Assembly: GCA_000708835.1 (NCBI GenBank)
Contig: DF237346.1
Span: 1-64,000, forward strand
DNA from: Klebsormidium nitens
Lineage: Eukaryota > Plantae > Klebsormidiophyceae
DNA: 64,000 nt
Direction: 5' to 3'
How positions within the stretch are numbered: position 1 is the stretch's first letter; each line of letters begins with the position of its first letter. A program made the translations under genes and the position numbers. This document shows, one piece after another, positions 4,312 through 62,700 of this stretch. Under the pieces are notes generated by a model that worked only from the letters and a program-made list of their open reading frames with translations, made no database searches and was not told where the DNA came from.

Positions 4312-5845
<1,534 letters not shown>

Positions 5846-6863: not shown

Positions 6864-7665
6864 AGGTGGTAGGACGGTATTCGACAGTGGGAGCACATTC
6901 AAAACCCTATATCTTCATCTAGACATCATGGAATCGCATTCCGTTTTTTCGAGGTGGTTGGGGGCATTGAAAGGCATCTTTAGGAGCCCCTCAACCTGTG
7001 ATACAACATGCCAAAGCAAATCGAAGCACATGATAAGTTGGCAAAATGTGCAGTTTTCGCTGCAGGAACCCCCCGGCAAAACGGGGGCAAAACGGCTTTA
7101 TTGGAATATTTTTGAAAGATAGAATTTGCTCGGAAGGGAGGCATTCAACATGGGGGGAAGATGGGATGTCAGAACANNNNNNNNNNNNNNNNNNNNNNNN
7201 NNNNNNNNNNNNNNNNNNNNNNNNNNNNNNNNNNNNNNNNNNNNNNNNNNNNNNNNNNNNNNNNNNNNNNNNNNNNNNNNNNNNNNNNNNNNNNNNNNNN
7301 NNNNNNNNNNNNNNNNNNNNNNNNNNNNNNNNNNNNNNNNNNNNNNNNNNNNNNNNNNNNNNNNNNNNNNNNNNNNNNNNNNNNNNNNNNNNNNNNNNNN
7401 NNNNNNNNNNNNNNNNNNNNNNNNNNNNNNNNNNNNNNNNNNNNNNNNNNNNNNNNNNNNNNNNNNNNNNNNNNNNNNNNNNNNNNNNNNNNNNNNNNNN
7501 NNNNNNNNNNNNNNNNNNNNNNNNNNNNNNNNNNCTGAGGGGCTCCTAAAGATGCCTTTCAATGCCCCCAACCACCTCGAAAAAACGGAACGCGATTCCA
7601 TGATGTTTACATGAAGATATAGGGTTTTGAATGTGCTCCCACTGTCGAATACCGTCCTACCACCT
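6864..7665. mobile_element. DNA transposon/MITE-like element with terminal inverted repeats of at least 130 bp and TA flanks; interior partly an N gap
   Basis: 6864-6993 (aggtggtaggacggtattcgacagtgggagcacattc...aggagcccctca) is a near-perfect inverted repeat of 7536-7665. TA lies immediately outside both ends (6862-6863 and 7666-7667), as expected for a Tc1/mariner-type target-site duplication. No transposase is visible, and 7177-7534 is N, so the true length is unknown. Confidence 0.8.
7177..7534. other. Assembly gap (run of N)
   Basis: Contiguous Ns. ORF-track entries spanning this interval are artefacts. Confidence 0.99.
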
Positions 7666-52300: not shown

Positions 52301-53919
52301 GCTACGAGATTCTCGAAATCTTTGTTACGTGTTCCACTGTCGTGATACGCGCCAGAGTCACATGTATATTCAGCCCGAACACGTCGGGGCATTTACCGGT
52401 CAGCTTGCACTACTTTCGAGAACGATCATTGGTCAGCTGGCTGAGCAGATGCATTTGATTACAGTTGCTGATCGTTGCCGTGGGCTTCATGAAAGAGGAG
52501 TATGGCTGACTCCTCACTATATTGTCCTGACATGACGGCTGACAGCAGTGTATTAAAGCTCTCTCATCGCGGATTGGAACCTGTCCCGGGAAAAAAATAA
52601 AATGCGGTTCAACATTTCGCTTGAGCCCGGTCCGTACTCAATCCGACCAACTAGTCGTCTTCCAGAATTAGCACTCGGTCAAGGTTGAATTATACCGTGA
52701 AGGTAGTAAAGACTCTGCGCGGCACCTTTCGGATATCGATGTAGCACGGATTAGCCGATGATTACGTGTCGCGGCCCGCTGGCAACAAGATCCCCGGCTG
52801 GGATAACCTGGACACGCACACCAGCACACAGTACTATCCTTTGCTAATACTTGTCTATCCTAGCGCATTGAGGTGCAATCCTATTGTCTCAAAGTATTCC
52901 ATGGTTACGACTCGGATGCCGCTGCGCCGACTGCGCGCGCAGCGGTCGTATGGCTGCCTGCGACGACGCCGGTCCCCAGCGCCTTGAGTCAAAGGGTGCT
53001 AGAAAACATGGCAGGCCGGCTACTGAGCTCAATGAGTCACCAGGTCGGAGGCTCTTGCCGCATGATCGTTACACCTGTCAGCTTGCCGAGCCACTGCCAC
53101 GTGGCGTGGTCAGAGTCGCGCGAATCAGGTGCGGGCTGCCCGCCTGCGCCATGGCGAGACATCAGTACTGAAGCGGACGCAGCGGGTCACCGTGAATTCT
53201 TAAAGGCGTCAAAGCACTCTATTTATTCTCTCCTTTTTTGCATCAGCAGGAGTAAAATTGCATCCGTTTTGACTCTGTATCGCGTGATTCGCACCCTTGA
53301 GGATAGATTTGGCACGCGCGGCCGCGTACCGCAAGCATCCGGCGCGGCCGGCCGGGGGCCACGATTCAGAGCGGCCGCGGCGGCGGCCGAACTGTGACCC
53401 CCCCCCGCTTACGTGGCACGCGGCCGCGGGCTCCAGACGCGCTCGGATGCCGCGCCAATTGCTTGAGTAAGCAACTTCGAATTTTGCAGAATATTACATA
53501 ATGCTTTCCATAGGAATGGGAAGTTTTTGAAGTTCGATGATTGTCGGAAACTCATCACCGTCAGAAGGAAGGTGATTTGCGCGGGTTGACGGCACAGATC
53601 TGCTGCCCCGTCACCGCCAATCTCGGGTGGCGGCATAGGGCCTCCATACGCAGGCGGAACTGCGAGTGGATCAGTAACGTAACCTGAGGTTACGTTACTA
53701 AAGCTGGTCTGACGTCAGGGTCACCGAAACTAGCATGATGGGGCTAGTTTCGGCTGAGACGGTGATGAGTGATGTGTCCCTTTTGACGTTTTGTTCATAC
53801 CAGAGTCAGAGATTTGAGGGGCCGCTGTTTAGATCAGAACGACTTGTAGGAGGCGCTGCGGCTGTGCACCTCTATAGCAGTGAGACGTCTCAGTGGATTG
53901 TGACGCGTCGAGGCTCAAT

Positions 53920-56900
53920 ATGGCTGCGTTGCTTGAGAGCCCGTGTGGTGCAACGAGTGAGGTTGCAGGGAGGAGTGAGGGAGTCTTCAGCAACGACGAG
54001 ATGACCATGCGCAGAAAAGGCGAGCTGAGCGAGTGGGTAGGAGGGCGGGTGAAAATTTCTCAGCAGCGCCGCCTTTGGCAGGCGCTCAACGCTGCTCAGC
54101 AAACTCTTTTGAATTGAGTGTTGAAGCGACCAGAATGAACAAGCGCCAAAGTGAGGCGCTTTTGTTCAAGAGGCTCGCTAGAGGCGACTATCTGGCGTCG
54201 CTGACTCATCTTTGAATTGTTTCCTTGCCTTGTCTCAAAGTTCTTTTCAGTTTTCTCGCTCGTCCTGAGGAACTCAAGTCGGACCAGGCACCGAAGCAGG
54301 ACGCCTCAGCTCTTTGACATACAAGGGCTTCGCACCCACGCTTGAAAAGTTCGTAAGAATTCCCTAAGAGTTCCACAATACCGTCCATAGAATCGTACTA
54401 ACCGCCCGTGGGCGCTGGCCGTATCTTCGGTCGGCGGCAGCGCGGCCGCGATGGCCGCGGCTAGCCGGCCGCGGCCGCACCGGGCCGGGCGGCTTGCGAC
54501 TGGCGGCCGCGAACGTCGGCAAAGAACGTGCTTGAAGCACGCGCCAGGGACGAAAGGTCTGCTCAACTGAAAGTACTAGGGACGCTGCGCTTCCTCGACG
54601 TTCTACAGCTTTCGCGAGGCTTGCGTCACAAGCTTTGCCCTCCTTCTCAAAACTGCATAGACGATTGCAAGGATGGAATGCTTCAGCGGGATGATGCACT
54701 TCGCGGATGGCAAGAAGCTGACACCACAGCAATTTCAGTACCTCATGCTTTTCTGCAACATCCCGAGATTCAAGCGGAACGTGGAGCTCTTGAAAAGCCA
54801 CTCTGATCCGCTCAGAGAGGCGGTGGGACTGCCGTTGGGAGAGGAGGGGGAGTACTTTGTGAGCAGCCAAGAGTATGAAGGATTGTCAGAAGAACTGAAG
54901 GTAAGCCTTTGAACGGATTCTTTCGCTATTGTGTACGGAAAGATGCGAGCTTTATCCAGAGCATATATGACCACTCCCTTTGTTTCACTAGACCTATCCC
55001 CTGAACAATATAAGATTGAGAATTTTAGAAATTTATAGCACTTGTACTGTCTGAGACCTTCTCGACTTGAATCAAATTTGAAGAACGGAGGCGGAAGTGA
55101 CTCGACCCTTGGAAGCTAAGAAAAGAATATGACGGTGGTTTGACCAAGGATAGTTGGACTTTTGAACAACCACTTTTGTTAATTATTGTCTGTTCCACGA
55201 ATATTGGTTTCTGTTTGTTCAAAACATTTGAGGGTCTCATCACCTCACCTCTCCTTCTGGGCAATACCGCAGGTTAAAGTACAACGGGATCCTCTATCCT
55301 CTATTTATATCTCTTCTGAACCAGGCGCTGTCAATCACACTCCATGCTGATGCGAAGCTTGGGGTTACCTTGGGGATGTATCTGCTGATTGGGCTTAGCT
55401 TGAGTCAAATCCTACGAACGTCACAGTAAATCAAGACCCGGTTGAAGGACGCTTTTCAGTATGGGCAGGGAGAAGTAAGTCCACCACCAATCTGATAAGA
55501 GGAGACTTTTCAGACGATGCTTTTCTCACAATACGCAGTGAGATATCAGAGCGCATAGGTACTTAAAAAGGGGACTTTCCAGTCGGAAGCGTTCTCAAAA
55601 TCGTTTTAAGACCGTACTTATTCCTGGTCCTGATTAATAGTGCGTCCTCGGGCTGAGATTTCCCCCTCGATCCAGACCATTTTAAAGACAAACTTTTGAT
55701 CAATATAATGGGAACTGCATCTCCGCTATTGCCAGGTCAACTTGCAATGTTCTGGGATTCCGATGCCTGCAGGAAGCCGTTCGCAACTTCTCCAACAAGT
55801 TAAATGGGGTTCGCTGGTACAACGGTGCGGGCATCAGTGTCGAATGCGAAACACCTGCCGGTGTTCCGGACTTGTATTGGTGTCACTGGAGGCCCTCAAC
55901 CACCTACAGGGGAATCAAGTGAGAGGACTAGTCAAAAACCTTCAGAAGATGGTTGGGGCAATTGAATAAACTCTCAAATCCAGTCCTTCGTGCTGAAAGC
56001 TTAGAAGGGAGCATGCGACCCCTGCCTCATACTCCAGATTCATACTTTGATGCCTACTTGATTAGTGCGCAAAAGAGTGGACTGGAAAGATCGTATTATT
56101 TTTGGACGTGGTAGTTGCGAGCAGAGCAGAATCATAATCTCCATCATGAGACTTTTCATTCCTTACATAGGAAAAGTAGATTCATTGATGTGGAGGTTTC
56201 GCGCTTCGAGTGCGGTCCTAGCTACCACGCTGGCTTTCTTTCTGGCTTAGTATTTCATTGGCGTTAAGTACTACCGAAAGAAATTACTAGCAGAGTCTAA
56301 AGCATTTACGTGATCCGCAGGTGGATAGGTTACTTCGGCAAAAGTATCACGTTTTTTCATGCGACCGAGTGGATGCAATGGATCTCCAAAAACATCCTGC
56401 AGAAGTGGGGGCTGCGGCTTGAAGGAGAGATTTGGTACCAAGGCAAGTGGATTTTATGCCGCCTAATCGGCGCCAGTCGCTCATCGTGTCCTTCATATCT
56501 CAGATTGGTCGAGAAACGTTTTGTAGACCCTGCGAAGTAGGCAGACCACACGCTTGTTCGCTTCTCTGAACCTTCAAAATACGGAGAATGTTGTACAATT
56601 TCGAATGCAAAGGACTGACCTTCAAAGGTTTCTCGATATTCTGCAACAACTGATTGAAGAAAAGCACGGCTAATCGTAACATACAGAATCACTTAGACTC
56701 CCACATTCGTTGCATACCTGCTTGCGGATGAGCATCGATTCTAAAACCGGCTCATGCATATCGTCGCAGCCATTTTTTTACAATCTGAAGAATTGATTCT
56801 GAGGCCGGCTTTCTATGCACATCCTTGCAGCAATTTATTCCAATCTGAAAGCCTTGTTGTTCTACAGGTGAAAACAGATCACTAACGGGCAGATTTGTAG

Positions 56901-58600
56901 CGACCACAACTGGAAAGATCACAAAGCAGGATGCGAGGTCGAGCCGGATGCAGAACCTGCTGGGTGCCGCAGCTAGAAACGATGTTGCGCTGGCCAAAAG
57001 TCTGCCCCGAGCGCAGCTTACGAGGAGAGACGCTTTTGGGAGAACGCCGTTGATGCTGGCCGCGTGCTTCGAAGCTTATGAGATGCTGGAATGGCTGACG
57101 GAGCAATCGTCTTCCGAAGAGCTGTACCTGGATCAGGCGAAATGCACGCCCGGGGTGAGGGTCTGTTTACGATCTGTTACGTTCTGGCAGTATATGAAAT
57201 TCTCAATTCAATATATGGTAGCATACGTCTACTGTCCACCGTCTCTTTGAGAGACCGAAACGGACTCGAGCTGGCTGTGGCTTATTTCAGGCATAGAGAG
57301 TCAACAGATTAGCCTGTCGACCGTTCTTTAGTAGAAAGAAGGAACACGCCTGGCAAAAGCCGAAGGAAATAGACCGTAAATTGCAGATGCTTGGATCTCA
57401 CAGCATCTCGTTGCACTTGTCTGTTCTTTTTCTGCACCGAGAGGGGCTCTTGTCTATCTGCGCTCTGCTTTAACCCGTTTTCAAAGAGTTCTAGGATCCC
57501 AGATTGACCCGAAGTGACTGATGCCGACACAACCTTAGTTCAGCTGATACTGACACTGATGATGTCAATCAAACGTTCCTGGTTTTACCCTGCATATAAC
57601 GGATGGAAAGAAGGTGTGCATTCTTCCTCTTCTCTGATCGTAGTCGGAAAAATAAGTGAGTTGTCTCAATACTCGGCGCGCTAGGATACGTGTCAATTAA
57701 CGCGACAGTCGGCTGGCTGGACGTGAAATTTGACTCTCTCTTCCTTTTATTCAGACGATGAACGGCCTTGACTTCGAAAAGGAGACTCTCTTCCATCTCC
57801 TCGCGCGCCTCGACCTCCAAAATCCCGCCTTCCAGCGCGCCCTGAAACACCTTTCCGCGCACCCCGTTCCGCCGGAAGCGCTGAGCTCCTTCACCGGAGA
57901 GCACCTCGACGGACCAACACCCCTGGGCCTTGCAATTGAGCGGGGAAACCGGGTCTTCGCGGAGTGGCTGATAGCGAAGGGGGCTGACGTCAACTTCCAC
58001 GGGTGGGGTTTCAACTTCAACCCGGAAGGCGAGAGCTACTACTCTTATCCGCTGATGACTGCCGCAGCCGTAGAGGATCCTTACTTCGTAGAGCTGCTGT
58101 TGAACAAGGGAGCTCGCATCGACTGCGAGAACGAGCCCAGACAGTCCCTCGTAGGCAGCACGCTTGGCAAGATGACCCCGCTTCAGTTGGCTGCATACAT
58201 GGGCCGCTTCGAAAACGTGCGCCTTTTGGCCTACTACGGCGCACGATTCGAAGACACGTGGCTGAGCCAGTTCACCACGAGCCGCGATGACCCGGAGGAC
58301 ATCGCCGAGCTCACTGCTCAAACGGTGCGGCAAGGCGTGATCTACCGGGATTACAGTAAACCATGGAAAAGCGCGGAAGCGCTCAAAGACGCACTGAAAA
58401 GGTTCGACGCAGCGGCACGGGAGGGCCTCTCCCGCCGCAGACTGCTGGTGGTGTCTGGGATGACGCGCCGAACGGTTCCGAGACTTCCGGAGCATTTGCT
58501 CAAGCACGTTATGGAGCTGGCAGGTCTGTTTCCGGTCGTGCAGTTTCCTGAAGATCGGCAGCTGCAGGCTCGAGCGGAGAAGTCCATAGCAAAGTACTGA
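53920..58600 (+). CDS. Fusion protein: N-terminal phage/bacterial-type domain of unknown function + ankyrin repeats + C-terminal F-box-like motif, 6 exons, ~585 aa
   Basis: Exons 53920-54036 (tentative), 54661-54900, 55773-55918, 56321-56442 (GC donor), 56868-57154 and 57755-58600 join in frame (1758 nt). Ankyrin motifs: GRTPLMLAA, GPTPLGLAI...LIAKGADVN, YPLMTAA...LLNKGARID, MTPLQLAA...LAYYGA. C-terminal LPEHLLKHVMELAG. Confidence 0.75.
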
Positions 58601-59744
58601 CGAAATTGGTACGAGTCACTTTTGGGATGAGCGCTTCCAGGGATGTGGCACGGGTCTAGGTGGGGCAGCAAGAATTGACCACTGCAATTACAGTTACCAT
58701 GGACTACAGCATTAGCTGAAGGGCCGAATCCATACCATTTCTTTTTACGCCTGGAACTCATTAGACTTTCCATGAAGCTTGCCGCTGAATTTTTCTTATG
58801 GTATTCTTAGGCCGCCCGTCACCTCGGCCGGGCACTTAGACAAGCTTTTACCTAACAGCTGATTGTTTGAGCAACGCACTGTTTAACGATCAATCAGGCA
58901 ATCAACACTGAATTGTGTACGTAAGCCCATTCCCAGTCTGGCGGGATGGCGGCCGGGCCGCTGGCGTGTCTGGATGCGAAGACATGAAAGCATGTTCTGG
59001 CAAAGCTGAGTAGCAGTCTCATCATCATGCGGGCGGCCCCGGGGCACTATATTTCCTTAAGCTTGATAGCGCGCGAACAGACTGGAATTCCGTGCGCCGG
59101 AGGCTTGTGCAAGGGCGTAATTTGCGACCATGTGCATATGATCCCAGCCATGCCGGGCAGAGTCGCAAGACTTCCATGACACGTACGCCGGAAACATCGT
59201 ATCTCATTGGTGTACGGCCTCGTCACGCGGACGGTCACGCGGACGACGACTCAAGTGTGCACCGCCGGCCCGCCGTACATGATCCCGCATATCTCTGCAT
59301 ATCGGAAACAGGGCGCGGCAGCACATGCATCCAATGATCGCCAAGGCCGGCCAAGCTGTGTGTTAACGCAGGCCCGGCGCACGGCCGCGCCGTACTGAGC
59401 CGCCCCGGCCCCAAAGTGACGTACAGTGAATTGATCTGAGACCGGCGAAGTGCAAGTGACCAGAATGAAGTTTGAACCAGTCCGACTGATACATTCTGGG
59501 CGGCCCGGGGCGGCCCCGCGGGCCGGGCCCATATGCACCAGAAGATCACAAGCGCGGGCAACATGGTTTGCATGAGTCAATGATAGGATCGATTGCATGT
59601 TGATCGTTTGGACAGTAATTACAAGACTTGCTTAAACGATGCCACCTAACAGCGTTGGAACCAAGCGCGGCCGATTATGCATTTTTAAGGGTCAACAGTT
59701 CACAGGCAATCGCCGCCATGAAGTCAACGTCAAGTAAGTCGTAT

Positions 59745-62700
59745 TTAGTTTCCAAGAGTCTGCCCTGCTTTCATGAAGAATCTGGGGAGTGTTCGCTTGG
59801 AGGACTTGGATCCTCTGTGCTGCCCCGTATGCGCTTTTAGATCTCCCTTACAGCCGGCCGCCGCTGCAGCCGACTCACAACACGTGTCAGCACGACTCGC
59901 GTCCGCAATCCACCTGTCATGAGCTTCAATATACCAATCCGGTAACACAGACGCCAGACCACCTGCTTCGTTCTTACTCAAACACTGTTCGTTGCTGCCG
60001 ACCTGAGTCTCGGAGCGTTGCAAGTTCCTCTCCGGACTTGACACCTGTGCAGCCACCCCTTTGCCGAACTCCTCTTGCTTGACTTCCCGCCGGACGTCCC
60101 ATTCTAAACACGCTGCGTCCGTGTCCGCACTCGCTCGGAGCCGAGCCTTGTTATGCAACCCCGACGACCATTCCCCGGCTAGCCCCCGCAGCAAATCCTG
60201 CTCGTCCAGGAGAGTATTCACACCGCTGTCCAGAGCGCCAAGTCCCCCAGGTCTCAGTCCGCCTCTTTCCTCAGGAAGCGGCCCCGTTCCTTCGTCGAAT
60301 GTCGCGAAGTCCGCGGCTTTTGGCGCAACGCTTGCCGATGCTTTAGGCGGGGATATCGAGCAGACTCGGAAGCGCTTGCTCCTGATCACGACCCGGCGCA
60401 CCTTTGGAAGGGCGCTCCGTTTCCGGTTCCGTTTACCCCTCAGCACAAGGGCGTCTTCCCCGTCGTCTACAAACCCGACCCTGTCAACTCCGTCCGCACA
60501 CACCGGGTTAGCCGAAACCTCTGCCAAAACCGGGTGGGGTTCTTGCAAACCACGCCCCTGACCCCACTGCTTGCACAGCTCCCCGAAGTGCGCGTTTGGA
60601 CACGTGTCCAAACCGTACGGGTCCTTTCCGGCGATCGGACGGATGACGCTCGGCCTCACCAGCCGCACGAAAGCGTCCAGCTCCACGAAGCACGAGTGCA
60701 ACGAGTAGGGAACCCTAAAGAGAAGCGGCTCCCTGGGGGCGCTGGGCTCAGGCAGGGGTTTCTTTAGGCGTTCCCTCGCGGCCGCTGCCGCGCCCTGAAC
60801 TTGCACCGCGCCTTTTCGCCGTGAACTGGGGAGATGCCGCTCTTGAATATCCTGCGCCGCGCCCTCAATTCCAGAACACTCCCTTGCCGACGTCAGCACG
60901 TCCGCTGCAGGCGTCACAGCCGGCATCGCGCTCCGCAACAATTCTGCCTGCTCCTCGTTCGAAAAAGTTCCGCACCCCCTGCCTTCCTCCTCCGCTTCGT
61001 CAGAACGCCTTTGCTTGCTGACACCCTCAGTAGGCCAGCCCCGGTTACCAAAACCAGGAATGGGAACCTGGGCGGTACCGCCGCTGACTCTGCTCCCAGG
61101 CGCACGATTCCCATGGCCCGGTACGGCCCCCCGGTGGTTTGGTTCGCCCGGTTGACGGTCGAGACTCCGCCAGCCTGAGGGGACGATCCCGATGGTGGGC
61201 GCGCGCGCGTTGAGAACGCGCAGGTGGTCGAAGTTGACGCTGCGGCGCGGGACGGCGCAGATGCGGGGGCGAGCTGTTTCGGACACTTCAGGCGGTTCCA
61301 GCGGTTGGGAGCGTTCGGCACTATCGGACGGTCCGCATGATCTGGAGGGCTCCGATGTTGACGGCTTTGCAGGATGACCCGACCCGGAGGTTGCGGACGG
61401 TCCGGAAGGTTCGGACGCGTTTGAGGATTGGAGTGCGTCAGACGGTTCTGATGGGGAAGACGTTCTGGAGGCTTCGACCGGTTCGGACCGTTCGGACCGT
61501 GTCGGGGAAGCGTCGGACGGTTCAGAAGGGGCGGAGGAACCGGAGGCTTTGAGTGGTTCGGACCGTGCGGACGGTGGGGCTGTGGCGTAGATGGAGGGGC
61601 CCGGGAGGAGGGTGAAGACGTCCGGCAGGCCGAGGACCCGGGCGAAGGCGAGGCGCTCGGGAGAAACGGCGATCTGCCGGCGGGAGGAAGCGTCACAACG
61701 GGTTTCAAAAGTCGCTCTAGTTGGAAGGGTCCTTAACATTTGGTCGTTTGATCTGGCCTACTCACGGAAAATTAAAGCTTTTGAGCTTTCATAAATTGGT
61801 TGTATGGCAACAATGCGTGTGCCAAGGTTCTTTTCTACAGCAGTGGTTTCGCGAAAGGAAAAAGAAAGCATCTTGAAAGCAGACTTCAGTGGATATTGCC
61901 TCTATCTTGTAGAGACAGAAGAACAACTCAACCTCACGAGAAACGAAGAGGGGCAAAGTCAAGAGACTGCTTCAAAGTAGCATAGTTCCCAACTAAATCA
62001 AGAAGAAGCTGAGCAGCGGATCAAGTCGTGCAGGACGCTTCGCAAGCAGCGTCGTCTCTGCAAAGTATTGTGCATTCGAGCGGCATATGAATCATCCTCG
62101 AAATAGATGGGAAGCTTTTGTAGCATCACACAGTGTGCCCTTTTCGAAAGTTAACCTTCGAAACCCTTTCCATCCTCCGCTCAACCTTCTGTAATGCGAC
62201 AGAGCCGCCTGTGCCCTACCTTGGTTCGGAGCCTGGTGGCGATTGACACTAACAAGTCCTCCTTGCCCAGGGAGTCGACTCCAATCAGTACTTGGTGTCT
62301 CGGGTGGGCTTCCAGTATCGCGCACACCTGCCGGCAGGAGAACGAAGGAGTCCGTGAAGAGAGATTGACGCCAGCTGTTCAGTGAAATCAAACATGAGCC
62401 TTGCCGGCTGGGAGCCAATCGTAAAGAAACGCCTTTGAAAAGATGATGCACAAAGTCCAACAATTCCTGTATCACCGAGGATCGCAGGGTTGTGCTTCAG
62501 ACGAAGTTAGAAAAAACGCCTCGGATGTCCTCAGTTGGGGCCAAGTTTTTGAGCAGGGAGTTCAGAACGGTCTGGAATCTTACAACCGCACTCAGTGAGC
62601 TGAATCGAGAGATTTTTGATGATTTCAGGTGCATTTCTCTTTCAACTATGACGAAGATCAGTAATGTGCAATTCCGGCTTTCGCAATGATTGTCAGGTCC

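What the first reader, a model, noticed from the sequence alone, without database searches (positions are those of the whole stretch)
53920..58600. Intron-containing algal gene fusing a phage/bacterial-type unknown domain to ankyrin repeats and a terminal F-box-like motif
Seen: fragments that the ORF track lists separately splice into one ~585-aa frame. The N-terminal half reads FSGMMHF..KLTPQQFQYLMLFCNIPRFKRNV..DPLREAVGLPLGEEGEYFV..TPAGVPDLYWCHWRPS..EWMQWISKNILQKWGLRLEGEIWYQGENRSLTGRFV. From recall (not searched), this follows in order a family of stand-alone hypothetical proteins of phages, bacteria and giant viruses (GYxTxFxG..YLxxFxxTRRMKR..DPxREAVGLPxGxEGEYFV..PPxxQPxLWCQWxP..EWLxYLIxxxLxPxGYxLNGxVxWQGE). 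Established: ankyrin + C-terminal F-box-like/PRANC architecture is typical of poxvirus proteins and intracellular-bacterial effectors that recruit SCF ligases. Inference: this could be a horizontally acquired domain domesticated (five introns gained) into a ubiquitin-ligase adaptor or an integrated-decoy-type antiviral sensor.
Basis: partly seen in the sequence, partly recalled or inferred. Interest (0 to 1): 0.78.

Follow-up and report, generated by a model that had tools for sequence, protein, structure and literature searches.

The report
Alga gene joining virus-type domain to ankyrin
A green-lineage alga expresses a spliced gene that joins an unstudied protein domain, otherwise found in bacteria, phages and giant viruses, to ankyrin repeats; the gene is real, conserved and probably acquired by gene transfer, but the proposed F-box (ubiquitin-ligase) tail is not supported by any test run here.

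Summary
The gene is real. Spliced RNA contigs from four public runs join the fragments into one polyadenylated mRNA of 5 exons and 4 introns, one of them GC-AG. It encodes 542 aa starting at ATG 54673.

Residues 1 to about 185 are a full-length member of an uncharacterised family of about 165 aa (consensus start MGYTTxFxG). The family has no Pfam or NCBIfam model; phrog_38666 (function unknown) matches its C-terminal half. I found it in 135 bacterial or archaeal loci, 175 IMG/VR viral contigs and giant-virus-like contigs. It is usually stand-alone and sometimes fused to TIR, HEAT, TPR or an RNAP alpha-CTD-like domain.

About 5 ankyrin repeats and a conserved C-terminal helical module follow. 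An orthologue with conserved synteny and several paralogues exist in related algal contigs, with dN/dS of 0.18-0.24. The algal copies form one clade; the donor is unresolved.

The F-box, PRANC or SOCS-box reading gets no profile support, and two paralogues end 15-17 residues after the "LPE" motif. The function of the N-terminal domain is unknown.

Two other first-reader notes from this scan report more copies elsewhere in the same genome; I did not test them.

The parts
53808..54900 (+). Exon 1: 5' leader 53808-54672 (contains a 65-aa in-frame uORF from 53920) and the CDS start, ATG 54673 to 54900 (residues 1-76)
   Evidence: RNA contigs (X14 record 8 collinear 53808-54898; X11 and X19 contigs break at 54384/54407-54516); ORF analysis
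54901..55772 (+). Intron 1 (872 nt, GT-AG, phase 0). A minor isoform uses a donor at 55474.
   Evidence: Joint found in all four runs; splice-site sequence
55773..55918 (+). Exon 2 (residues 77 to about 125, includes the YWCHWRPS motif)
55919..56320 (+). Intron 2 (402 nt, GT-AG)
56321..56442 (+). Exon 3 (residues about 125-166, EWMQWISKNILQKWGLRLEGEIWYQG)
56443..56867 (+). Intron 3 (425 nt, non-canonical GC-AG, donor AG|GCAAGT)
   Evidence: The joint 56440>56866 carries a 3-nt ambiguity; the sequence shows the only standard splice-site reading (GC-AG) within that ambiguity is at 56443/56867
56868..57154 (+). Exon 4: end of the N-domain (to about 56926) and the first ankyrin repeats
57155..57754 (+). 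Intron 4 (600 nt, GT-AG).
   Evidence: Joint found in all four runs
57755..58938 (+). Exon 5: ankyrin repeats, C-terminal module, stop at 58598-58600, 3' UTR, poly(A) site near 58938
   Evidence: (loose AAAAAAAA end in X20)
54673..56926 (+). Coding span, interrupted by introns 1-3, of the N-terminal 'MGY-family' domain (residues 1 to about 185)
   Evidence: 133 bits, E 1e-40 against a family HMM built without the alga; 32-36% identity over 170-185 aa to bacterial members; the core invariant residues tabulated are kept
56957..58261 (+). Ankyrin-repeat region (residues about 196-430, about 5 repeats, interrupted by intron 4)
   Evidence: Pfam Ank_2 at 48.2 bits (cutoff 27.3) and Ank at 46.1 bits on the exon-5 piece; sub-threshold Ank hits on the exon-4 piece
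58403..58528 (+). Conserved C-terminal helical module FDAA..G..RRLLVx.G..(loop)..PE.LL..hhEhA.L (h = hydrophobic), residues 478-519.
   Evidence: Alignment of five orthologues and paralogues; helices predicted but pLDDT 60; no Pfam or PDB-sequence match

Best explanation
This is an expressed, spliced, polyadenylated nuclear gene of a green-lineage alga. Other agents of this scan call the genome Klebsormidium nitens; I did not test that. The gene encodes a 542-aa chimeric protein.

Architecture:
- Residues 1 to about 185 are a complete, selectively maintained copy of an uncharacterised alpha/beta domain of about 165 aa (here called the MGY family). Its natural range is bacteria, phage-like contigs and giant viruses.
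- About five ankyrin repeats follow.
- The protein ends in a lineage-specific two-helix module of about 45 aa.

Evolution, inferred from distribution and the tree: the domain entered the algal lineage once by horizontal transfer. The donor is unresolved, and a giant virus is a plausible vector. It then gained three spliceosomal introns, was fused to host-type ankyrin repeats, and duplicated into a small gene family.

Mechanism, inferred and not shown: I think it most likely works as a modular binding or scaffold protein in virus-host or stress signalling.
- The MGY domain keeps a conserved basic patch (R/K-rich helix plus the invariant D..R motif). It would bind a phosphate-bearing ligand or a partner, as its prokaryotic relatives would when fused to TIR, HEAT, TPR or HhH modules.
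- The ankyrin repeats and the C-terminal helices would tether it to host partners.

The tail should not be called an F-box on present evidence.
For: - One mRNA: spliced contigs in four runs, four canonical or GC-AG introns, and a poly(A) end.
- Family membership: phmmer of exon 1 found 152 representatives at E<=1e-3. The spliced N-domain scores 133 bits over the whole HMM. Y24, F28, R36, D46, R49, V52, L54, P55, G57, C95, W97, W120, W132 and G138 are kept in every algal copy whose recovered sequence covers them.
- Range of the family: 135 confirmed loci in species-representative bacterial and archaeal genomes, many of them filamentous cyanobacteria, Planctomycetota and Streptomyces or Kitasatospora. 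A further 175 loci in IMG/VR, including a GVMAG contig. A giant-virus-like contig, L162, carries P0004, the best non-algal match to exon 1. A Tupanvirus protein is the top hit in BFVD at E 1e-9. phrog_38666 matches 52 of 55 members.
- Fusions in prokaryotes: TIR_2 twice, HEAT twice, TPR, RNAP alpha-CTD.
- Fold: the AF2 model of a family member has pLDDT 94.4, with no convincing PDB match.
- Conservation: the orthologue (L163b plus L165) sits next to the same downstream DRMBL gene. Nucleotide similarity is confined to exons, and dN/dS is 0.18-0.24.
- Paralogues L163a and L164, and the more distant copy L001, share the same architecture and tail.
- The algal copies are monophyletic, SH-aLRT 87-93.
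- NCLDV core genes have been reported in the Klebsormidium genome (PMC5294986).
Against: - No biochemical function is known for any member of the MGY family.
- Gene neighbourhoods in bacteria are uninformative (Uma2, VTT, STAS, FHA-wHTH).
- PADLOC has no hit.
- The window copy and its orthologue lack the otherwise near-universal N-terminal MGY(T)T, so their activity may differ from that of the prokaryotic proteins.
- The position of the algal clade in the tree is unresolved, so the donor and even the direction of transfer rest on distribution alone.
- The search for other eukaryotic homologues used only the 79-aa exon-1 piece.
Confidence: 0.6

Rival explanations
1. The C-terminal LPEHLL... segment is a truncated F-box, PRANC-like or SOCS-box-like motif. 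The protein would then be a cullin-RING ubiquitin-ligase substrate adaptor, and the ankyrin or MGY parts would select the substrate.
For: - The motif h-P-E-x-L-L-x-x-h-h-E-h-A-x-L (h = hydrophobic) is conserved in all five orthologues and paralogues, at the C-terminus and behind ankyrin repeats.
- Its hydrophobic spacing resembles helix 1 of an F-box. From memory only, it equally resembles the LPxP/YL end of ASB SOCS boxes.
- The tail is under purifying selection.
- A giant-virus-like contig that carries an MGY protein also encodes an F-box-ANK-SAP protein, as a separate gene.
Against: - No F-box, F-box-like, PRANC or SOCS_box Pfam hit at E<=10 for four tails, or at E<=1 for the whole exon-5 piece.
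- A profile of five tails found only ribosomal S7 and aminotransferases at E>0.2 in PDB sequences, although many F-box and SOCS-box chains are there.
- The tails on contigs L164 and L001 end 15-17 residues after the LP/FP-E motif, so a full F-box cannot start there.
- The AF2 model of the tail has pLDDT 60 and pTM 0.28.
- The tail is not found on other proteins by word search, apart from the orthologue.
Confidence: 0.2
2. The gene is a passive remnant of an endogenised giant-virus or mobile-element insertion. It is still transcribed but does not serve the host.
For: - NCLDV core genes are reported in the Klebsormidium genome.
- Earlier scan notes place a virus-like replicative element about 9 kb beyond the window's end (untested).
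- The family is common in viral contigs.
Against: - Four spliceosomal introns with positions shared by paralogues.
- dN/dS of 0.18-0.24 in both the N-domain and the ankyrin-plus-tail exons.
- Conserved synteny with a host DRMBL gene in a related species, while the introns have diverged beyond alignment.
- Steady expression in seven studies' runs.
Confidence: 0.08
3. The gene is an antiviral sensor of the integrated-decoy type. The MGY domain would mimic a viral protein or a viral target, and its perturbation would trigger a response through the ankyrin and tail part.
For: - The domain is shared with viruses.
- The multigene family has tandem duplicates (earlier notes).
- In bacteria the domain is fused to TIR, a typical immune effector.
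Against: - No NB-ARC, STAND, TIR or other signalling scaffold is present in the algal protein.
- Selection is purifying rather than diversifying between orthologues.
- PADLOC has no hit for the family.
- No expression data under infection are available.
Confidence: 0.1
4. The domain is ancestrally eukaryotic, or was passed from algae to viruses and bacteria, rather than acquired by the alga.
For: The tree does not resolve where the algal clade sits.
Against: - Hundreds of intronless prokaryotic and viral copies are spread over many phyla, against a single monophyletic algal clade.
- The only close hits to exon 1 are exon-like fragments from related algal contigs.
Confidence: 0.04

Closest known systems
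Uncharacterised 'MGY' family (phrog_38666; ESM Atlas 'hypothetical protein' clusters of Cyanobacteriota and Actinomycetota; Tupanvirus soda lake protein A0A6N1NUV7)
   Same: Colinear over the whole domain of about 165 aa. The core invariant residues tabulated are kept. HMM score is 133 bits.
   Different: The algal copy is interrupted by three introns and lacks the N-terminal MGY(T)T. It is fused to ankyrin repeats, a fusion partner not seen among the 150 representatives listed (partners seen: TIR, HEAT, TPR, HhH).
Poxvirus or intracellular-bacterial ANK plus PRANC/F-box proteins, and metazoan ASB (ANK plus SOCS box) proteins
   Same: Ankyrin repeats followed by a short conserved C-terminal helical motif with an LP-E-x-L-L-like start.
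   Different: No Pfam F-box, PRANC or SOCS_box match, and no PDB-sequence match. The conserved module is a helix-loop-helix (FDAA..RRLLVL..PE.LL..) that ends the protein in two paralogues. Binding to SKP1 or Elongin C is untested.
YubB/Api92 ferredoxin-like domain (Pfam DUF1281_C, PDB 2ijr)
   Same: Weak similarity of shape: VIA Z 3.8; Atlas TM 0.45; repeated low-ranking BFVD hits. Such genes lie near MGY genes in 13 viral contigs.
   Different: The profile-profile comparison gives 0.2% probability. No shared motifs.
Horizontally acquired genes of streptophyte algae and endogenised giant-virus genes in green algae
   Same: A prokaryote- or virus-type domain in a nuclear, intron-bearing, expressed algal gene.
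   Different: Here the acquired part is a domain of unknown function built into a new multidomain protein family, not a whole enzyme gene or a viral hallmark gene.

Membership tests
MGY family (uncharacterised; phrog_38666-related) | Full-length match to a profile built from family members without the alga | tested here: met
   hmmsearch gives 133.4 bits, E 1e-40, envelope residues 2-190; blastp gives 32-36% identity over 170-185 aa
MGY family (uncharacterised; phrog_38666-related) | Invariant or near-invariant core residues (Y24, F28, R36, D46, R49, V52, L54, P55, G57, C95, W97, W120, W132, G138 in P0016 numbering) | tested here: met
   All are kept in the window copy, and in the other algal copies wherever the recovered sequence covers them
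   The window copy starts MECFSG behind an in-frame stop; the orthologue starts MESFSG; the copy on contig L001 keeps MGYVT
Ankyrin repeat (Pfam PF12796 / PF00023) | Pfam match above the gathering score | tested here: met
   Ank_2 at 48.2 bits (cutoff 27.3) and Ank at 46.1 bits (cutoff 21.1) on the exon-5 piece
F-box / F-box-like (PF00646, PF12937) | Profile match to the 40-50-aa three-helix F-box | tested here: not met
   No hit at E<=10 on four tails or at E<=1 on the exon-5 piece; no F-box chain in the PDB profile search
F-box / F-box-like (PF00646, PF12937) | About 40 residues available C-terminal to the LP motif in all family members | tested here: not met
   The window copy has 38, but the tails on contigs L164 and L001 end 15-17 residues after the motif
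F-box / F-box-like (PF00646, PF12937) | Binding to SKP1 | not testable with these tools
PRANC (PF09372) | Pfam match at the C-terminus behind ankyrin repeats | tested here: not met
   No hit
SOCS box (PF07525) | Pfam match; BC box L-x-x-x-[CSA]-x-x-x-h (h = hydrophobic) followed by a Cul box | tested here: inconclusive
   No Pfam hit. The RRLLVL[SCGE]G stretch fits L-x-x-x-[CS] in three of five copies, but the fourth hydrophobic position is not kept (read). The resemblance to ASB tails is from memory only.
YubB/Api92 (DUF1281_C, PF18406) | Sequence-profile homology | tested here: not met
   hhalign probability 0.2%; no Pfam hit on family members

The most novel reading that the evidence does not exclude
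The MGY domain is a so far unrecognised module of virus-host conflict systems. It would be carried by phages and giant viruses, fused to TIR effectors and repeat sensors in bacteria, and captured by a streptophyte alga. The alga would have built it, with ankyrin repeats and a new C-terminal docking module, into an expanding family of immune-type sensors or ligase adaptors. That would be an independent eukaryotic invention of an immune receptor from a viral part.
Probability: 0.15. Interest if true: 0.8.

Novelty: new variant of a known kind. Interest (0 to 1): 0.55.

Why it matters
- It is a clean, RNA-verified case of a prokaryote- or virus-type domain that was domesticated in a streptophyte alga. 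The domain gained introns, was fused to ankyrin repeats, duplicated, and is under purifying selection.
- It draws attention to a large, well-folded protein family that has no Pfam model, no solved structure and no known function. The AF2 model has pLDDT 94 and no convincing PDB match. I found the family in 135 bacterial or archaeal loci and 175 viral loci.
- The family's fusions to TIR and repeat domains suggest a role in signalling or conflict. The algal fusion offers a eukaryotic handle on that function.
- The result also corrects the gene model and removes an attractive but unsupported F-box label.

Tried and rejected
- **Pfam, NCBIfam, PHROG on the separate N-domain exon pieces:** nothing significant. 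The pieces are too short; the spliced sequence could only be used in scripts.
- **tblastn of family member P0016 against 50,697 GenBank phage records:** no match. PHROG 38666 and IMG/VR do hold the family.
- **Foldseek against PDB:** nothing at E<=0.001.
- **VIA wide search:** best Z 5.0, to PPM phosphatases and proteasome or Ntn-type sandwiches, aligning under half the model. I treat this as a common arrangement, not homology.
- **DUF1281_C / YubB relation:** rejected by hhalign, probability 0.2%.
- **PDB sequence search with the family profile:** only chance-level CNBD hits, E 0.19.
- **PADLOC:** no hit.
- **Gene neighbourhoods:** the conserved neighbours reflect synteny among close Microcoleus genomes (Uma2, VTT, STAS) or phage blocks (GP88, DUF1281_C). 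There is no cross-phylum partner. The contexts of the TIR fusions are not defence islands.
- **Phylogeny for a donor:** the algal clade sits on a long branch, and its sister relations have no support. The careful IQ-TREE run did not finish in time, so the quick tree was used.
- **Tail tests:** Pfam at E<=10, a PDB profile search, a word search in 5.8 billion proteins, and AF2 gave no F-box or SOCS evidence. The low-confidence tail model was not sent to fold search, because matches would be meaningless.
- **First related-loci run with the 55-sequence alignment:** failed for lack of a conserved stretch. It was repeated with 12 closer sequences.
- **Organism identification from exact protein look-ups:** the window's proteins are not on record. 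The species name comes from earlier notes only.
- **Paralogue inside the window:** none.
- **Not run:** Complex prediction, because no SKP1 or Elongin C sequence could be obtained.


Full report
**1. Observation**

I looked for sequencing runs holding window 53900-58700 and laid the contigs of four of them on 53400-59000.

All four runs contain spliced contigs with the same joints. After resolving the stated 1-3-nt ambiguities against the sequence, the exons are:

| Exon | Coordinates |
|---|---|
| 1 | 53808-54900 |
| 2 | 55773-55918 |
| 3 | 56321-56442 |
| 4 | 56868-57154 |
| 5 | 57755-58938 |

- Introns 1, 2 and 4 are GT-AG.
- Intron 3 is a GC-AG intron with the donor AG|GCAAGT.
- Run X20 ends in a loose poly(A) stretch at 58938.
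- X19 record 15 spans exons 1-4, X20 record 22 spans exons 2-5, and X14 record 8 spans exons 1-3. Together they support one mRNA carrying the N-domain and the ankyrin exons.
- Low-depth contigs show some intron retention. One minor alternative donor at 55474 (X11) would truncate the protein.

The longest ORF of the spliced mRNA is 542 aa. It starts at ATG 54673, preceded by an in-frame stop at 54658-54660, and stops at 58598-58600.

It has one intron too many: the extra small exon it implies within 57155-57754 is skipped in every run. About 40 residues at the N-terminus are also wrong. The ATG at 53920 opens a separate 65-aa upstream ORF, and no splice joins it to the CDS.

The 5' leader is either 865 nt long or belongs partly to a separate upstream transcript. 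Contigs of X11 and X19 break between 54384/54407 and 54516, and depth differs on the two sides.

**2. The N-terminal domain**

The separate exon pieces hit nothing in Pfam or PHROGs.

A phmmer search of the 79-aa exon-1 piece against 1.84 billion cluster representatives gave 152 proteins at E<=1e-3.

The consensus reads MGYtTdFxGxF..PL....YL..F..TRRMKRD...DPLREAVGLP.G.eGeYFVG...N.PP..QPGLWCqW.P..dG..L.WDG.EKFY.YvEWL.YLI..FL.PWGY.LNG.V.WqGEd..D.G.I.V.DN.

The spliced algal residues 1 to about 185 align colinearly over the whole domain.
- They score 133 bits (E 1e-40, envelope 2-190) against an HMM built without them.
- They are 32-36% identical over 170-185 aa to cyanobacterial members.
- Every core near-invariant residue tabulated is kept (Y24, F28, R36, D46, R49, V52, L54, P55, G57, C95, W97, W120, W132, G138).
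- The N-terminal MGY(T)T, R32 and several peripheral positions are lost.

Family members themselves have no Pfam or NCBIfam model. 52 of 55 match phrog_38666, function unknown, over their C-terminal half.

**3. Range of the family**

- In one genome per bacterial or archaeal species, 135 loci were confirmed by tblastn. Among the 80 listed, many are filamentous cyanobacteria (Microcoleus, Coleofasciculus). Planctomycetota, Streptomyces or Kitasatospora, scattered other phyla and one Promethearchaeota MAG also appear.
- In IMG/VR, 175 loci were confirmed. Many lie on contigs of 100-370 kb, and one is labelled GVMAG.
- The contig of P0152 looks like a phage: dozens of small co-directional genes, plus AAA_5 and DUF2201.
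- P0004 is the best non-algal match to exon 1 (51% identity). It lies on a compact, intron-less contig with F-box-ANK-SAP, poly(A) polymerase, MIOX, Arf-type GTPase and NADAR genes. That is a giant-virus-like gene set.
- In BFVD, the only strong structural match of the family model is a Tupanvirus soda lake protein (E 1e-9, 26% identity).
- GenBank phage records gave no tblastn hit with P0016.

C-terminal fusion partners seen among the representatives are TIR_2 (P0069, P0147), HEAT (P0099, P0042), TPR (P0142), an RNAP alpha-CTD-type HhH (P0146) and a tandem duplication (P0006). None carries ankyrin repeats.

**4. Fold and function of the domain**

AF2 on P0016 with 55 aligned relatives gives a confident model: pLDDT 94.4, pTM 0.89. 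It is a mixed alpha/beta domain with seven strands and two long helices.

- Foldseek finds nothing in the PDB at E<=0.001.
- The exhaustive VIA search peaks at Z 5.0, to PPM phosphatases and Ntn or proteasome sandwiches, with under half the residues aligned. By the tool's own calibration this is in the noise range.
- The ESM Atlas returns three 'hypothetical protein' clusters of Cyanobacteriota at TM 0.87-0.88, then DUF6205, DUF1281_C, DUF6806 and Imm7 at TM 0.39-0.52.
- YubB/DUF1281_C proteins recur as weak BFVD hits, and such genes sit near MGY genes in 13 viral loci. A profile-profile comparison gives only 0.2% probability, so I reject homology on present evidence.
- PADLOC has no model for the family.
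- Gene neighbourhoods give no cross-phylum partner.

The function is therefore unknown. The conserved basic stretch (TRRMKR; R-F-K-R in the alga), the invariant D46 and R49, and the fusions to TIR, HhH and repeat modules lead me to favour a ligand- or partner-binding regulatory domain, with low confidence. A catalytic role is not excluded.

**5. The rest of the protein**

Pfam finds ankyrin repeats above threshold in the exon-5 piece (Ank_2 at 48.2 bits, Ank at 46.1 bits) and below threshold in the exon-4 piece. By eye there are about five repeats between residues 196 and 430.

A variable linker follows; one paralogue has a 25-aa insertion there. Then comes a conserved module, FDAA..G..RRLLVx.G, an 8-10-residue loop, and h-P-E-x-L-L-x-x-h-h-E-h-A-x-L (h = hydrophobic).

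- Pfam on four tails at E<=10 gave nothing. There was no F-box, F-box-like, PRANC or SOCS_box hit.
- A profile of five tails against all PDB chain sequences returned only chance-level ribosomal S7 and aminotransferase hits.
- A word-indexed search of 5.8 billion proteins with the tail alone returned only the orthologue.
- AF2 predicts three helices but with pLDDT 60 and pTM 0.28, too poor for a fold search.
- The tails on contigs L164 and L001 terminate 15-17 residues after the P-E motif. The conserved unit is therefore a C-terminal helix-loop-helix, not a 40-aa F-box beginning at LPE.

From memory, the end of the module resembles the LPxP...YL end of ASB SOCS boxes about as well as it resembles F-box helix 1. 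That is a lead only.

**6. Relatives of the fused gene**

Five related algal-type contigs carry the same architecture with introns.
- L001 is a 95-kb metagenome contig.
- L163 holds a complete tandem paralogue followed by the 5' end of the true orthologue.
- L165 holds the rest of that orthologue.
- L164 holds a further paralogue from the same sample.

The orthologue is 73-83% identical in protein and lies beside the same downstream DRMBL-domain gene. Its nucleotide similarity to the window is confined to the exons (78-84%), while the introns do not align. NG86 dN/dS is 0.18 for exon 1, 0.18 for exon 4 and 0.24 for exon 5. Both the acquired domain and the ankyrin-plus-tail part are therefore under purifying selection.

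Intron positions inferred from HSP boundaries coincide among the copies. There is no second copy in the window.

Two unchecked first-reader notes of this scan (s1-328818, s1-324361) report further copies, one of them triplicated, elsewhere in the genome.

**7. Origin**

In trees of the domain the four algal sequences form one clade, with SH-aLRT 87-93. Their position among the other members has no support, and the branch is long.

Single acquisition followed by duplication is therefore supported. The donor is not identifiable.

The direction of transfer, into the alga, rests on distribution. There are hundreds of intron-less prokaryotic and viral copies across many phyla. Against them stands one algal clade, and the only close matches to its exon 1 are exon-like fragments from related algae.

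A giant virus is a plausible vector for three reasons:
- The best non-algal exon-1 match is on a giant-virus-like contig.
- Tupanvirus has a homologue.
- NCLDV core genes have been reported in Klebsormidium genomes (PMC5294986).

The species name Klebsormidium nitens comes from other agents' notes and was not verified here. The window's own proteins are not retrievable from the collection.

**8. Verdict**

- The homology claim, made from memory, is confirmed.
- The horizontal-transfer inference is well supported as to direction and single origin, but not as to donor.
- The F-box, ubiquitin-ligase and decoy interpretations are unsupported, though not excluded.
- The protein is a new architecture built on an undescribed but very widespread domain family, whose function remains the main open question.

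Noticed in passing
window 53808-54672: The 5' leader is unusually long, up to 865 nt. It holds a 65-aa uORF starting at 53920, in the same frame as the main CDS but closed by stops. RNA contigs of two runs break at 54384/54407-54516 with different depth on either side. There may be two start sites, or a separate upstream transcript.
   Followed up: partly
window 56443-56867: Intron 3 is a non-canonical GC-AG intron (donor AG|GCAAGT). It is used in all four runs.
   Followed up: yes
window 54901-55772: A minor isoform in run X11 keeps the first 574 nt of intron 1 and splices from 55474 to 55773 (GT-AG). It would stop translation three codons after residue 76.
   Followed up: no
window 56387: The run X20 contig has one extra A inside an A5 run in exon 3. 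This is probably a homopolymer sequencing error of a 2012 run rather than a real frameshift.
   Followed up: partly
window 59745-61739 (-): A single 664-aa ORF with a DRMBL (SNM1/Artemis-type DNA-repair metallo-beta-lactamase) domain lies tail-to-tail with the gene. It is syntenic with the related species (64% aa identity on L165).
   Followed up: partly
window 5117-5839 (-): An exon-sized ORF encodes a WDR5-type WD40 propeller (Pfam Beta-prop_WDR5, 350 bits).
   Followed up: no
window 7177-7534: A run of 358 N, an assembly gap.
   Followed up: no
L163:1200-4990 and L163:6133-7118 with L165:1-2966: In a related alga, a complete paralogue sits about 1.2 kb upstream of the orthologue, as a tandem duplication. 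The window has no such upstream copy.
   Followed up: yes
L162:479-1747 (-): The giant-virus-like metagenome contig that carries the MGY protein P0004 also encodes a separate F-box plus ankyrin plus SAP protein. The other genes called on the stretch shown include NADAR, 2OG-Fe(II) oxygenase, poly(A) polymerase, MIOX and an Arf-type GTPase.
   Followed up: no
L167:6324-7933 and L168:2943-4552: A bacterial MGY-TIR fusion gene starts 9 bp after an FHA plus winged-helix (Trans_reg_C) gene. The pair may be an operon that links the family to phospho-threonine signalling.
   Followed up: no
L096:7786-8388 and 12 other viral loci: DUF1281_C (YubB/Api92-like) genes, which begin exactly with MPNWC, lie a few genes downstream of MGY genes in a conserved phage block that also holds a GP88-family gene.
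   Followed up: partly
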